Made by a program: the position numbers and the translations under genes | Shown: in pieces, positions 808 to 56,716 of the stretch | How positions within the stretch are numbered: position 1 is the first letter of the stretch | Layout: each line of letters opens with the position of its first letter | The notes under the pieces: generated by a model | Databases searched by the model: none | The model's input: only the letters and a program-made list of their open reading frames with translations | Told to the model about the DNA's origin: nothing | Source: Saccostrea cucullata | Lineage: Eukaryota | Length of the DNA: 64,000 nt | Direction of reading: 5' to 3' | Assembly: GCF_032062105.1 (NCBI RefSeq) | Contig: NW_026930899.1 | Coordinates: 1-64,000 of the forward strand

Positions 808-2493
808 ATGTCGTCTGGAAATAATGAACCCTGCAGATTGCGGTAGGTATGTTTCATCTAGTATTTCAGCATAAATGTCCATTGCAAAGTTGAGGCTTAC
901 TGTTGATGTTTGTATCTTATTTTATCACTAATTTTTAGTTTAGATGAGAAAGAATGTTGTGCTAATTATTATTGGAGCGACAAGGAGAACGATTGTTTGC
1001 GTAAGTTTAATCATTTGTTTATAACCTTATTGTATGTAATATGATTCTTAAATGTAAGAGGGTAAAGGAGAGGATAACGAATAGAGATCGATCTAAAAGT
1101 TGTCTTTTAAACAATACCATTGTAAATAAGACTTTAAATATAGATCAAAAGAAATGTCAGACGTGGGGTCAGGTGCCTAAGAGGAGTAAGCAATCCCTTT
1201 TGACCGGTAACACCTGTCGTGCGCCATATAAATTGATCAGAGAGATGAATTATTCCTTAGTAAAACTTAATAGAGGAACATGACCTTCATTGACATAAAA
1301 CTTGTCAGTCAAAATGCGTCGCATTCATCAAGATGTATTTCCAACAAACGTCAATTACAGTTCATAGAATTTTTATTTTTAAAATGCTGATTAAGAAGAG
1401 AATAACATTTTTCAGCATGTGAACTTGGATTCTTTGGTGTCAACTGCGATCAACCTTGTCCTTACGGCCAATATGGAAAACTATGTGGGAAACCGTGTAA
1501 ATGTGCAACTGACGAATACTGTGATAGAGTATCGGGATGTGTAACTAATGGTATAACAAATTTTATTTAAATTATCTGTAATAGTAATCACAGAATTTCT
1601 TTAGCAATCTGCTTTCTAAAATAATTAAGAGTATGATAAGATATGATTTTTTATATAAAAAAAGAAAGAACTGTTTGACAAAACTAATTTGAATCATCTA
1701 TGTTTTTTTCCCTTCACACCCAGGAACAACAGTACAAACCTCAACGTACATATTTCATTCTACATCTGTTCCTTCATCAAAACTAGAGAGTACAACTTCA
1801 ACAACGGGATGGACAAAAACGGAATCAACTATAGAGATAGCTGTTAGAGAGTCTACCCTAATACCGACTGGACCAATAAAGGAAGAGATAAATAACAATA
1901 TCGTAGTAATATTAATGGGTGCAGTAATAGCTTTTCTTTTTCTTATAATACTTTTGGCAATTGTTAAGAAATTATGTTCCGCACGTTCAAAGAAAAAATA
2001 TATAAAAAAGGAAAATATATTAGAATTAAATAAGGAAGGTAATGAAATAGAAGTATATCATGAAATAAACATGGATGAAATGTTGGCTAATCAGATAGAA
2101 TTGCCAGATAATCGTTACAACAGAATAATGGACGATGTAGTGCGACCCAAATATTTGCAAATAGGATCCAAAATAGAAAAGGAAACAAAACAAACATATA
2201 ATGAAATTGACAAGGAAAATTCAACTTCAACCGGAAATAATGGAGATTATTTAGAACCGGAGTCAAGTGGGCGAGTGAATGCATATATAGAAGTTATAGA
2301 ACCTTTGATACATAACTCTAACTCTTTAAATAGTGATCAAGATGGTGGAAGCTCCTCAAACAAGTCTGACCGGTCTTATCAGGATACAGGGACTCTAGCA
2401 CAGGGTGACATGTCATGTCCCAACGAAATCAATGATCCAAAATCTCACGAATCGAAGAATAATGAATATCTAGATGTTGTTAATGAGTTATAG
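808..2493 (+). CDS. G1: EGF-like (MEGF10/CED-1/Nimrod-like) single-pass receptor, long ITAM-bearing tail
   Basis: Exons 808-842 (MSSGNNEPCRL), 939-1000 (ECCANYY..DC), 1416-1550 (CELGFFGVNCDQPCPYGQYGKLCGKPCKCATDEYCDRVSGC), 1724-2493 (S/T stalk, TM IVVILMGAVIAFLFLIILLAIV, tail ending EYLDVVNEL). All introns are GT-AG with compatible phases 2,1,1. The first exon is the least certain. Confidence 0.85.
1140..1370 (-). mobile_element. Penelope-like element 3' end fragment (G1 intron)
   Basis: GGGGTCAGGTGCCTAAGAGGAGTAAGCAATCCC...GACCGGTAACACC is a diverged match to the 3' region of the copy at 24553-25268. Confidence 0.6.
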
Positions 2494-4302
2494 TTAAACA
2501 GAAATGAAAATAAATTCATATAAAACTCCATATTTTATGTAGTTATTTTTTCTAGATTTTTATTTAATGCTTATTGCTCATTGAATACGGAAGTAGTTTT
2601 AAGTTTTTCCGACATTTCGATTTTCAAGTATGTTGTAACCTTGTGTAATATGCCTGATCTATGCAATCAGGAGAAAGTGCATCGATATAAATTAATCGTT
2701 TTAAAGTGCAGAAAAACCTACAGAAAAACTTTTTATTTATTATCCTCCCGGACTTCTTGCGATTGTACGCATGTTTTTGTTCTCCGGGCTGTTTCTCGGA
2801 TATGGCTGGGAAAATCTTTCTGAAACTTTCCTCAAAGGACAGTCACTGGTTGTAGTTTTGTTGTTTGGTCATTTAGTTTCAAAATGCTACCGTTGCCTTG
2901 AAAACCTGCAAAAAGCGACGAATTTTGTCCAAGAATGTTCTCACTGGTCCCCTGAACATATTCGTCATGAAACTTTATTGATTTAATGAGTTGTAATTGT
3001 GCAATTTGCATTTAAAAATTGCAAATTGTCAATAGTTGCCATGGAAACAGGGGAAAAGTGAAAATAATTCTTATCTTTGATTTTTAAATCAAAGTACAGA
3101 AAGGACCGATACGTGTTGATGGTTGTCCAAGCTTATTTAATGGGTATTGTTTTAGTGTTGAAAAAATGCAAGTCTTGTCCAGTACGGGGCGACATACGCT
3201 ACTGTTTGCAATAGCAGACTTTCTAGTTTTTCATTACATTTACCTATTTATTTATTACAGTACCTATAGGTAAAAAAAATCTCTTTTAGATTTAAAGAAC
3301 AATAAATTAAGACTATGTATTTAATTTTTAAATTTATATACAAGCATGACCGTGTATTATACATCAATTTTTCTTTAGACGTGAGCTGAGGCCACTGAAG
3401 AGTCTAACGATAAGAAACTTCATAAGAATCCTTACAACCATAGACACATTGCGGGTTACAGTAAATGTTCAAACAAGCCTCTTTCTTTACGCCTCACTAA
3501 GCTATCAATAGTAGTGAAGGAGAAACGTCAAGGGTACTGTGCAACAATATATTCAAGAAGATGATGTGAATCAGCAGATGTAGATTCTAAATAATTCCAA
3601 AGAACTTTTGGACAATCTTAAATCACAATATTTTACCAAAATCAACAATTCCTCACGATAAATTAAAGTCCAGCAGGCATGTTTACGAAACTTTCCTAAG
3701 ATTGTTCATAAGAAATTTTCTAAGATGTATCTTAAGAAAATCTTAGGATCATCGTAAGATTATCTTAAGGTGTTTTTCAAAGCAATCTTATGACTATCCT
3801 AAGCTAAGACGTCTTAAATCATTTTGACATTGAAATACTCCAAGCTTTTAACCATTGTCAGGGATCAGAGAGTTGTTATGTTTTGCTATATGTAATGCTA
3901 CACGTTATGTCATCATAATGAAAATATCTAAAGAGTGAAAATAAAAAAAGAAGAATTTGAGGGGGGGGGGTATTTTTAAATTTATAGATATAAATTGTAT
4001 ATTTTTAATTATTAATCATCTAAAATCAAAGATATATTGTAATATTGGTTACATCTAAAATCAAATAGAGTGCTATTGATCATTCAAAATTCTTGAACGA
4101 TGAAAAGTGCGCCAATTTTCATAAGTGAAACGGGATGCAGGGGAAAATCGGAAGGAAGTAGGCAAAACTGGAGGAGCCCCCTCCCTCAAAGACTACATCA
4201 TTCGCAAGAAAAATTGTGAGAATAATTGGTTATACTCCAATCTCTGCCATAGAGGGCAGTACATGTATCGACATCTGTGAGGTCACCTGGAAAAACCCAT
4301 TT

Positions 4303-55600: not shown

Positions 55601-56716
55601 CAATAACGACATACAGATTGTCTTCTGATCACACGGACACTAGGGTAACAGTTATTTTACGATGTAAAATAGTCTGTATAATCGTAACTTTTTACAAATA
55701 ATAAAATACATGTTTGTATATACATTCGTGGGGATGTAAATTCGTGGGTCAGGGTTACCCACCAAATCCACGAACACTGGTCCCCTACGAACAATGATGA
55801 TTCCACAGTATTTACAAACAATTGAAACAAAAATATCAGCAGTCTCGTTTAAAGTTATCATTTCAAAAGTTTTATGGTCGATACAATGATCTTGTCGGCA
55901 AATAAAATTTATCATTGAGTCATTAAATGCTGACTGATGTTTTTAATACTAATTGTTAATCATAATTATACATTGATTTGTCGACGGATTTTACCGTTAA
56001 TTCCCGATCATGACAATAAGCACACGGCGAGTGTGACCGGTCGGCAGGGGATGCTCACACTCCTCCAAGGCACCTGATCCCACCTCTGATGTTTTGGAGG
56101 TCCGTGTTTGCTCTGCTCCTATTTTGATGTTTTATGGACTTTTTATCTTAAATACTATTCTCCATATGTTTCGTCAACGTCATTTTCATTTCATCAGTTT
56201 TATTTAGATAATAACATATATAAAAATGAAAGATTGGAGAATAATGTCCGCTGTATGTCTTTGATCTCGGCAATAATCATGATAATATTGTAACTTACTT
56301 CTACCATACATTGCAATTCAAGGTAACTAACTCCAGGTCTGTCTGTCGCCTTTTTTTACACGAGTTAATTTTTTTTTTTTCAGAGTGTCCAGCAGGATTT
56401 TTCGGAGAAAATTGCAGTCGTCAGTGTGGCTATCCCTTCTATGGTACACTTTGTCAGAACAAGTGTCAGTGTGATAATATCACGTGTGACCGTGTCATGG
56501 GATGTATTAAAATCACTTCTACAGATGCAGCAAAAGGTTAACATCTCATTTTATTTGTCTCTGTGAGATCTTATTACCATTGTTTTCACCAGTAAAAAGT
56601 ATTTTAAATTTCACTTTTGTTTGTTTTAGAGATTCTTCCCATGAAAATACCATCTCCAGAATCAAATTACAGCACATCTCAGGAAGAAACAAGAAACGGT
56701 GACACCTCGATTAAAA
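52662..56716 (+). CDS. G11: EGF-like receptor with signal peptide (5' part; TM exon not found in window)
   Basis: Exons 52662-52759 (MDDTFIILFALCLGIYTLVKG/DCNNTHPDQSG), 52886-52932 (LNCCTNFYIYNGECR), 56384-56536 (CPAGFFGENC..DRVMGC), and a probable stalk exon 56630-56716. Confidence 0.75.
53360..53760. mobile_element. Tc1/mariner-like MITE
   Basis: TA|CACTGAACA ... TGTTCAGTG|TA. Confidence 0.5.
55810..56170 (+). mobile_element. Penelope-like 3' end fragment (G11 intron)
   Basis: QQSRLKLSFQKFYGRY followed by the conserved 3' UTR. Confidence 0.8.

What the first reader, a model, noticed from the sequence alone, without database searches (positions are those of the whole stretch)
808..56716. 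Tandem array of ~11 minimal EGF/Nimrod-like receptors that looks like an invertebrate paired immune-receptor complex
Seen: all loci are on the + strand and share one exon grammar (GxC micro-exon or signal exon / CCxNY-F exon / 8-Cys EGF exon / one stalk-TM-tail exon). Non-Cys residues are highly divergent, there are two tail classes, and the array includes a pseudogene and an orphan exon. Established: CCxGY followed by EGF/NIM repeats marks the Nimrod/Draper/CED-1/MEGF10 phagocytic receptors, which normally have many EGF repeats. Here the ectodomain is usually reduced to one module on a mucin-like stalk. Inference: this is a birth-and-death cluster of activating and inhibitory haemocyte receptors, analogous in logic (not homology) to the CD300/Siglec/KIR clusters, possibly for pathogen, apoptotic-cell or allo-recognition.
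Basis: partly seen in the sequence, partly recalled or inferred. Interest (0 to 1): 0.88.

Follow-up and report, generated by a model that had tools for sequence, protein, structure and literature searches.

The report
Oyster miniature SCARF-like receptor gene array
A rock oyster carries a row of about a dozen small, separately spliced cell-surface receptor genes of a large oyster family related to scavenger receptor SCARF1, several without a signal peptide; a similar cluster sits in a snail parasite-resistance region, but nothing yet shows that these are paired on/off immune receptors.

Summary
The array is real. In Saccostrea cucullata, twelve loci lie on the + strand: eight intact transmembrane genes, an orphan tail exon, a pseudogene, a TM-less copy, and a twelfth locus just past the window. 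RNA confirms locus 5's three junctions and one of locus 6, with no joint between them. These are not Nimrod proteins: no NIM repeat, and the motif is mostly CCxN[YF]. The ~70-residue, 12-Cys head matches SCARF1's N-terminus and dimer segment, then Tie2. The family is oyster-wide, with at least 150 module matches in this genome. Tails are enriched in YxxI/L/V (36 vs 13 expected), but have no strict ITIM, and TMs lack charged residues. The Cys head is the most conserved part (dN/dS 0.14), against hypervariable recognition. Loci 3/4 share a 95%-identical head exon on unrelated tails, the only paired-like hint. Five loci lack a signal peptide; for loci 5 and 6 RNA supports this, suggesting type III topology. 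The closest described system is the Biomphalaria SCARF-like resistance cluster (PMC13712769). The scan noted similar arrays elsewhere in this genome (s1-711498, s1-725287, s1-721906).

The parts
808..2493 (+). Locus 1: exons 808-842, 939-1000, 1416-1550, 1724-2493; 333 aa; no signal peptide; long tail with 6 YxxI/L/V and the only ITAM with 6-8 spacing
   Evidence: a relic copy lacking exons 1-2 lies on contig C3168
6798..12302 (+). Locus 2: exons 6798-6942 (signal plus CxxNYF), 10624-10749, 10932-10974, 11375-11433, 11564-11695, 11771-11902, 12124-12302; three 8-Cys exons; 29-aa tail ending AVYSEV
   Evidence: [quoted passage not shown]
8240..10300 (-). LINE retroelement (endonuclease plus reverse transcriptase) in intron 1 of locus 2; not part of the receptor
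   Evidence: Pfam RVT_1 E 2.6e-34; not seen in the C3168 paralogs
14466..16933 (+). Locus 3: exons 14466-14598, 14778-14906, 16587-16933; weak signal; short tail with ITSM-like TVYAEV
   Evidence: TM-tail exon homologous to that of locus 2 (33%, E 1e-4)
20315..22664 (+). Locus 4: exons 20315-20450, 20606-20734, 21865-22664; locus-3-type head (8-Cys exon 94.6% identical in DNA) on a locus-1-type long tail (44% identical)
25594..25671 (+). Transcribed 5' leader of locus 5 with what looks like a decayed signal-peptide reading frame (codon -21 is ATA here; in S. echinata it is ATG followed by two stops)
   Evidence: the 5' limit is inferred from contig coordinates and depth
25672..27189 (+). Locus 5: exons 25672-25700, 25806-25864, 26074-26205, 26321-27189; 362 aa, RefSeq LOC134230479; no signal peptide; 7 YxxI/L/V
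   Evidence: all three junctions in raw RNA reads and contigs; S. echinata ortholog
31217..32764 (+). Locus 6: exons 31217-31242, 31321-31379, 31480-31710, 32031-32764; in-frame TGA directly before the ATG; no signal peptide; long tail
   Evidence: junction 1 and an unspliced leader back to 31095 in RNA; second copy on C4971, RefSeq LOC134262560
33600..35979 (+). Locus 7: exons 33600-33622, 34754-34815, 35190-35378, 35468-35979; no signal peptide; 110-aa tail
   Evidence: intact copy on C4971
39465..40865 (+). Locus 8: exons 39465-39487, 39614-39675, 39822-39989, 40108-40865; no signal peptide; long tail with 6 YxxI/L/V
47944..48603 (+). Locus 9: orphan stalk-TM-tail open frame (219 aa); no Cys exons found upstream
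   Evidence: no relative in the genome
50076..50520 (+). Locus 10: pseudogene; signal exon 50076-50173, CC exon 50292-50338 with a stop, frameshifted 8-Cys exon from 50429 (end approximate)
   Evidence: 72% DNA identity to locus 11
52662..56781 (+). Locus 11: signal exon 52662-52759, 52886-52932, 56384-56536, 56630-56781; no TM helix (secreted form or decaying copy). Its intact paralog, locus 12, lies at contig 66380-67539, outside the window

Best explanation
A local tandem cluster of a large oyster family of miniature SCARF/MEGF10-like single-pass receptors. Each gene encodes one ~70-residue, 12-Cys head (a truncated EMI-like C..CC..C cap plus one shifted MEGF10-type repeat), a Ser/Thr-rich stalk, a TM helix and a tail of acidic YxxI/L/V motifs. 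Shown: gene structure, splicing of locus 5, purifying selection on head and TM, enriched tyrosine motifs, turnover by duplication and deletion. Inferred mechanism: the head binds a ligand or a sister receptor (it matches SCARF1's dimer segment), clustering lets Src-family kinases phosphorylate the tail, and SH2 proteins (Syk/Shark-type kinases, phosphatases, adaptors) dock, as with Draper. Signalling is built into each tail, not borrowed from a DAP12/FcR-gamma-type adaptor. The most likely role is surveillance of foreign or damaged surfaces. Each paralog keeps its own conserved specificity, so diversity comes from gene number, not from hypervariable alleles. Loci 1 and 5-8 have lost the signal peptide and are probably inserted N-terminus-out by the TM helix (type III).
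For: Models and phases. Junctions in RNA. SCARF1 is the best match by sequence profile (E 1.7e-10) and first in both fold searches; model 31-72 aligns to SCARF1 77-119 at 2.1 A, Z 3.3. SCARF1 dimerises through F82/S88/Y94 and binds modified LDL at 133-221 (PMC11563577); the F82 position is F/Y in 42 of 49 family members. Relatives are named MEGF10, CED-1-like, PEAR1 or draper-like in four oyster genera. At least 150 module matches in the genome. YxxI/L/V 36 vs 13.1 expected and ITAM-like pairs (6-12 spacing) 5 vs 0.4, p about 0.001 each. dN/dS against S. echinata: Cys 0.14, TM 0.11, tail 0.47, stalk 1.2. A Biomphalaria cluster of the same broad build lies under a schistosome-resistance peak (PMC13712769); MEGF10-named transcripts differ between Perkinsus-tolerant and sensitive oyster families (PMC9892467).
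Against: No ligand, tissue or phosphorylation data. Fold matches are weak (Foldseek E 0.016; Z 3.4 or less) and EphA2 and TNFR Cys ladders score almost as well. SCARF1's Y94 position is variable here (Y in 16 of 49). No Pfam family passes its cut-off. Only loci 5 and 6 were tested against RNA. No NPxY motif, so CED-6-type engulfment coupling is not indicated.
Confidence: 0.6

Rival explanations
1. A true paired-receptor complex: long ITAM-like tails activate, short ITSM/ITIM-like tails inhibit, and pairs share a ligand.
For: Loci 3 and 4 share a head exon at 94.6% DNA identity, against 82% for exon 1 (p 0.003) and 79% for the intron without gaps, on tails of different lineage. Short tails carry a single TVYAEV or AVYSEV motif; long tails carry ITAM-like pairs above chance.
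Against: Synonymous divergence in that exon (3 of 26 sites) is not significantly below the intron's (p 0.42), so gene conversion is not established. No strict ITIM anywhere, one ITAM with canonical spacing, no charged TM residue. The other heads are only ~37% alike outside Cys, so they are unlikely to share ligands. The head is conserved, not diversifying.
Confidence: 0.17
2. Cell-cell recognition or adhesion molecules used in tissue organisation, wound repair or clearance of dying cells rather than pathogen sensing; heads pair with each other in cis or trans.
For: The retained module matches SCARF1's dimer segment and not its lipoprotein-binding region. The head is under purifying selection. 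MEGF10, PEAR1 and CED-1 have such roles (own knowledge).
Against: Large copy number, relics and copy-number variation are more typical of defence families (own knowledge). The Y94-equivalent residue is not conserved.
Confidence: 0.15
3. Mostly drift: a decaying array in which the signal-less loci are transcribed pseudogenes or cytosolic remnants and only a few copies work.
For: Three of twelve loci are broken or incomplete. Locus 5's leader looks like a dead signal sequence. The S. echinata counterpart of locus 6 has lost its first splice donor. Expression is low.
Against: Locus 5 lacks a usable signal in both species, yet its Cys head (dN/dS 0.14, p 4e-7) and TM stayed constrained. Loci 6 and 7 stay open with all 12 Cys on a second haplotype that is 10-20% diverged over much of the region.
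Confidence: 0.08

Closest known systems
[quoted passage not shown]
   Same: Molluscan cluster of single-pass genes with a Tie2/MEGF10/SREC-like Cys region, inconsistent EGF calls, many fragments and presence/absence differences between haplotypes.
   Different: Described with a signal peptide and mostly small tails without recognised domains (tyrosine motifs are not discussed); linked genetically to parasite resistance. The oyster genes have one 12-Cys module, long multi-tyrosine tails and a signal-less subset. I did not align the snail proteins, so orthology is untested.
SCARF1/SCARF2 (SREC), PEAR1, MEGF10/11, CED-1/Draper
   Same: N-terminal C..CC..C cap and the CxxGxFGxxC-xxx-CPxxxYGxxC-xxx-CxC pattern; best PDB match; tyrosine-motif tails.
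   Different: Those have many EGF repeats and are single-copy or few; here the first EGF's N-terminal half and all later repeats are missing, as are SCARF1's LDL site and any NPxY motif.
Oyster RefSeq genes named MEGF10-like, CED-1-like, PEAR1-like, draper-like or uncharacterized
   Same: The same family: same 12-Cys head and four-exon layout in S. echinata, and the same first three exons in O. edulis.
   Different: Named automatically and inconsistently; my paper searches found no study describing them as a family. About two thirds of database hits keep a signal peptide (32 of 48).
Nimrod superfamily (Eater, NimA-C)
   Same: A CC motif ahead of a Cys-rich region; clustered genes.
   Different: No NIM repeat; CCxN[YF] rather than CCxGY (definition in PMC4073527).
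Paired receptor families: KIR, CD300, Siglec; Botryllus FcoR; Hydractinia Alr
   Same: Clustered, fast-turnover genes with tyrosine motifs; FcoR tails also carry many core YxxI/L/V motifs (PMC12065747).
   Different: Those are Ig-superfamily proteins with canonical ITIMs or hemITAMs/ITAMs, charged-TM adaptors in the vertebrate cases (own knowledge), and polymorphic ectodomains.
Type III TNF receptors (BAFFR, BCMA, TACI, XEDAR)
   Same: Small Cys-rich ectodomain without a signal peptide, N-terminus outside (PMC6001812): a precedent for the topology proposed for loci 1 and 5-8.
   Different: No sequence homology shown; only weak fold similarity to TNFR ladders (Z 3.2 or less); tails are tyrosine-based.

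Membership tests
Nimrod superfamily | NIM repeat CxPxCxxxCxNGxCxxPxxCxCxxGY | tested here: not met
   No match to the repeat's core pattern in any of 10 models; definition from PMC4073527
Nimrod superfamily | CCxGY motif before the first repeat | tested here: not met
   Only locus 5 has CCxGF; the others have C[CPV]xN[YFH]. In 49 relatives the position is N 28, G 10, D 9
SCARF/MEGF10/CED-1 (SR-F-like) | Sequence homology of the Cys region | tested here: met
   Profile hit to SCARF1 E 1.7e-10 and Tie2 E 1.4e-9; Atlas neighbours MEGF10, PEAR1, SCARF2
SCARF/MEGF10/CED-1 (SR-F-like) | Many tandem EGF-like repeats | tested here: not met
   One 8-Cys exon per gene, three in locus 2; no Pfam EGF above cut-off
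SCARF/MEGF10/CED-1 (SR-F-like) | Full EMI domain or NPxY motif (Draper/CED-1/MEGF10) | tested here: not met
   No Pfam EMI hit in 49 members; 0 NPxY; only a SCARF1-like truncated cap
SCARF/MEGF10/CED-1 (SR-F-like) | Type I topology with signal peptide | tested here: inconclusive
   Clear in loci 10-12, likely in 2, weak in 3-4; absent in 1 and 5-8; hydropathy heuristic only, no SignalP
SCARF/MEGF10/CED-1 (SR-F-like) | Scavenger ligand binding or engulfment | not testable with these tools
   Needs binding and phagocytosis assays
Paired activating/inhibitory receptor family (KIR/CD300/Siglec logic) | Activating member with short tail and charged TM residue | tested here: not met
   No K/R/D/E within any TM core; the K/R flagged for loci 3 and 4 are at the cytosolic edge
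Paired activating/inhibitory receptor family (KIR/CD300/Siglec logic) | Inhibitory member with canonical ITIM | tested here: inconclusive
   Strict [ILV]xYxx[LV]: 0; loose pattern 7 vs 3.7 expected (p 0.07); one ITSM-like motif in locus 3
Paired activating/inhibitory receptor family (KIR/CD300/Siglec logic) | Near-identical ectodomains on different tails | tested here: inconclusive
   Met for one exon of one pair (loci 3/4, 94.6%); conversion not significant at synonymous sites; other heads ~37%
Paired activating/inhibitory receptor family (KIR/CD300/Siglec logic) | Diversifying selection or high polymorphism in the ligand-binding domain | tested here: not met
   Cys head dN/dS 0.14; 0 changes (locus 6) and 3 amino-acid changes (locus 7) between haplotypes; listed RNA variants of locus 5 fall in stalk and tail. 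Few comparisons; no site-model test
Paired activating/inhibitory receptor family (KIR/CD300/Siglec logic) | Opposite signalling outputs and immune-cell expression | not testable with these tools
   Tissue of the runs is not given
Type III membrane protein | No N-terminal signal; one TM with the positive side C-terminal | tested here: met
   In-frame stops 1-29 codons upstream with no ATG between; unspliced leaders in RNA for loci 5 and 6; net charge after the TM +2 to +7, higher than before it
Type III membrane protein | N-terminus actually translocated to the cell surface | not testable with these tools
   Needs a topology assay

The most novel reading that the evidence does not exclude
Oysters have an undescribed family of hundreds of miniature SCARF-like receptors with built-in phosphotyrosine tails that work as a combinatorial on/off recognition system: heads are swapped between activating and inhibitory tails (loci 3/4), and part of the family has switched from type I to signal-less type III insertion.
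Probability: 0.15. Interest if true: 0.78.

Novelty: new variant of a known kind. Interest (0 to 1): 0.42.

Why it matters
Many oyster genes are labelled MEGF10-like or CED-1-like by pipelines and turn up in disease studies without anyone knowing what they are. This locus shows that many are a distinct minimal receptor with a signalling tail, and gives a small testable set: loci 3 and 4 for tail logic, loci 5 and 6 for topology. A cluster of similar build maps to schistosome resistance in snails, so the family is a reasonable candidate for mollusc disease resistance. Loss of a signal peptide while the ectodomain stays under selection would be a clean natural case of a type I to type III switch.

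Tried and rejected
One large MEGF10 gene: rejected; each intact locus has its own stop and RNA shows no joint from locus 5 to 6. Nimrod: rejected. Pfam assigns nothing above cut-off to the receptors. Word-based homolog searches found only the S. echinata ortholog and one other relative; the full HMMER scan was needed. The single-sequence fold was poor (pLDDT 61); the alignment-based one reached 80, but fold matches stayed weak. Signal-less database proteins are unreliable as support: two of four checked were gene-caller artefacts with a signal upstream, a third has an upstream in-frame ATG with a hydrophobic run, and one Logan transcript has an in-frame stop before a signal-less start. A chimeric locus-2-head/locus-1-tail gene on C3168 was considered and rejected: that copy has its own TM exon and the locus 1 piece is a headless relic. 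A tree of the 70-residue heads was too weak to use; signal-less loci did not group. Paper searches found no description of the oyster family.
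Full report
Source. A protein search with one tail exon returned a 100% match named as an uncharacterized protein of Saccostrea cucullata and a 63% ortholog from S. echinata. The window is the first 64 kb of a 432-kb contig in a 1.17-Gb assembly that appears to keep alternative haplotypes.

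Observation. Loci 1-8 are intact single-pass genes. Locus 9 is an orphan TM-tail frame with no relative in the genome. Locus 10 is a pseudogene. Locus 11 ends without a TM helix. A twelfth, intact locus lies at contig 66.4-67.5 kb, after which unrelated genes follow. A family profile finds twelve 8-Cys exons in the window, all on the + strand at 22-53 bits, with nothing above about 3 bits on the minus strand. There are two head types. Type A fuses a signal-like start with C[PV]xNY in one exon (loci 3, 4 and the first module of locus 2). Type B has a first exon carrying one Cys and ending in phase 2, then a CC exon (loci 1, 5-8, 10-12 and the second module of locus 2).

Expression. Twenty runs from nine studies hold part of locus 5. 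Laying four runs on 25451-31400 showed all three locus 5 junctions as GT-AG joints in raw oligo-dT reads and contigs, the first junction of locus 6, and no listed joint between the two loci. Raw depth was 1-4x in about 1.7-1.9 Gb per run, and tissue is not given. This rules out the single-large-gene reading at this point of the array. Other loci were not tested against RNA.

The head. In 49 aligned relatives eleven Cys are invariant and the first Cys is conserved in most. The profile's best solved relative is SCARF1 (E 1.7e-10), matching its N-terminal CC segment weakly and the stretch from the first EGF's C-loop into the next repeat; Tie2 follows. The alignment-based model (pLDDT 80) again ranks SCARF1 first, though weakly, with residues 31-72 on SCARF1 77-119 at 2.1 A. 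The 8-Cys exon is therefore not a standard EGF domain. I read it as one MEGF10-type repeat cut in a shifted register (inference from the alignment; disulfides were not read from the model). That SCARF1 segment holds the dimer contacts F82, S88 and Y94, while modified-LDL binding needs residues 133-221 (PMC11563577). F82 maps to a position that is F/Y in 42 of 49 members; Y94 maps to a variable one. There is no NIM repeat and CCxGY is largely absent, so this is not Nimrod.

Family. The profile finds 150 of 150 scored candidates in this genome out of 4969 first-look candidates. This is a lower bound, but it includes haplotype duplicates and repeats of multi-EGF genes. The named relatives looked up are all oysters of four genera, called MEGF10-, CED-1-, PEAR1-, draper-, delta-like or uncharacterized. 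S. echinata has another four-exon array about 2 Mb away on the same scaffold, and the order of loci 5 and 6 is conserved there. Contig C3168 carries two locus 2 copies and a headless locus 1 relic, which shows turnover by duplication and deletion. The scan's earlier notes list several similar arrays in this genome.

Tails and pairing. YxxI/L/V motifs number 36 against 13.1 expected from shuffles, and ITAM-like pairs with 6-12 spacing 5 against 0.4. Strict ITIMs number 0, loose ones are not significant, only locus 1 has canonical ITAM spacing, and no TM core has a charged residue. The short tails of loci 2 and 3 are related to each other; the long tails form a second group. Locus 4 joins a locus-3-type head to a locus-1-type tail (44%). 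The 8-Cys exons of loci 3 and 4 are 94.6% identical against 82% for exon 1, but synonymous divergence is not significantly below the intron's, so gene conversion is suggested, not shown. This pair is the only paired-receptor-like feature.

Selection. Locus 5 against its S. echinata ortholog gives dN/dS 0.14 for the Cys head (p 4e-7), 0.11 for the TM, 0.47 for the tail and 1.2 for the stalk. On haplotig C4971 the locus 6 head exons are identical while its stalk-TM-tail exon differs by 10%; the locus 7 head differs at three residues. Listed RNA variants of locus 5 change amino acids only in stalk and tail. Heads are thus divergent between paralogs but conserved within a locus, the opposite of what allorecognition or an arms race at the binding site predicts. 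These are few pairwise comparisons.

Missing signal peptides. Loci 1 and 5-8 begin with an ATG within eight codons of the first Cys, with an in-frame stop 1-29 codons upstream and no ATG between; five such ATGs by chance would be about 7e-5 (a pattern noticed after the fact). In RNA, a contig of locus 5 runs unspliced to about 25594 and one of locus 6 to 31095, through the candidate acceptors; for locus 6 every frame from that acceptor meets a stop. Locus 5's leader aligns without gaps to S. echinata, where codon -21 is ATG followed by two stops, while here it is ATA with an open hydrophobic frame. I read this as a dead signal sequence in front of a gene still under selection. TM flanks are more positive on the C-terminal side, which predicts N-out type III insertion, as in BAFFR, BCMA, TACI and XEDAR (PMC6001812). 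Caveats: contigs cannot show starts and drop rare forms; most database relatives keep a signal (32 of 48); some signal-less database entries were artefacts; and topology is untested.

Known parallels. [quoted passage not shown] MEGF10-named transcripts differ among Perkinsus-tolerant eastern oyster families (PMC9892467). Botryllus FcoR tails carry similar core tyrosine motifs on Ig ectodomains (PMC12065747). So clusters of this kind are known in molluscs; the minimal 12-Cys form, multi-tyrosine tails and signal-less subset were not found described.

Verdict. A real, partly expressed, selected receptor array of a common oyster family: a new variant of a known kind. An immune or surveillance role is plausible by analogy; activating/inhibitory pairing is unproven and fails several defining tests. 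Interest 0.42. 

Noticed in passing
window 8240-10300 (-): 687-aa LINE ORF (endonuclease plus reverse transcriptase) inside locus 2 intron 1; not seen in the two paralogous copies on C3168, so probably a recent insertion.
   Followed up: partly
G000:C4971 against window 30600-40000: The second haplotype is 99-100% identical over locus 6 exons 1-3, 80-90% from the locus 6 tail exon through locus 7 intron 1, and 96% near locus 8, with a 7.5-kb insertion: a mosaic of young and old segments. A third contig (C17059) overlaps 30584-31147, so a duplication is possible.
   Followed up: partly
window 53457-53480: A 23-nt AG/GT-bounded CC-like relic exon (RCCENF) inside locus 11 intron 2; weak profile score of 7 bits.
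   Followed up: no
window 11547-11954: A 207-nt tandem duplication (88% identical) created the third 8-Cys exon of locus 2; RefSeq's paralog model on C3168 has only two.
   Followed up: partly
window 28039-28204 and 42646-42763: Long near-perfect inverted repeats (37+35-nt nested arms; 49-nt arms), MITE-like; the first gathers very deep RNA coverage from copies elsewhere.
   Followed up: no
window 3665-5862: 2.2-kb segment bounded by 37-nt inverted arms (81%), possibly a DNA transposon.
   Followed up: no
window 5850-6340, 23400-25270, 36400-36920, 48940-49700, 55800-56160, 63530-64000: Many fragments of one abundant interspersed repeat with reverse-transcriptase-like remnants (no Pfam hit), also present in S. 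echinata.
   Followed up: no
window 259-499: tRNA-like, SINE-looking repeat (94% to a copy on C4971); not called by ARAGORN or Rfam.
   Followed up: partly
L027 (S. echinata), RefSeq LOC133173848: The 738-aa model joins two complete tandem receptor genes, each with its own TM-tail exon; probably an annotation fusion.
   Followed up: partly
L001:15941-19916 (S. echinata): An LTR-retrotransposon-type element (RT, RNase H, integrase) sits between loci 5 and 6 in S. echinata, whose locus 6 first exon has lost its GT donor.
   Followed up: no
contig C13036, about 91-103 kb (L005-L006): The array is followed by a glycosyltransferase-like ORF (MGAT4-like by eye) and an ankyrin-repeat ORF with a partial duplicate near 107 kb.
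   Followed up: no
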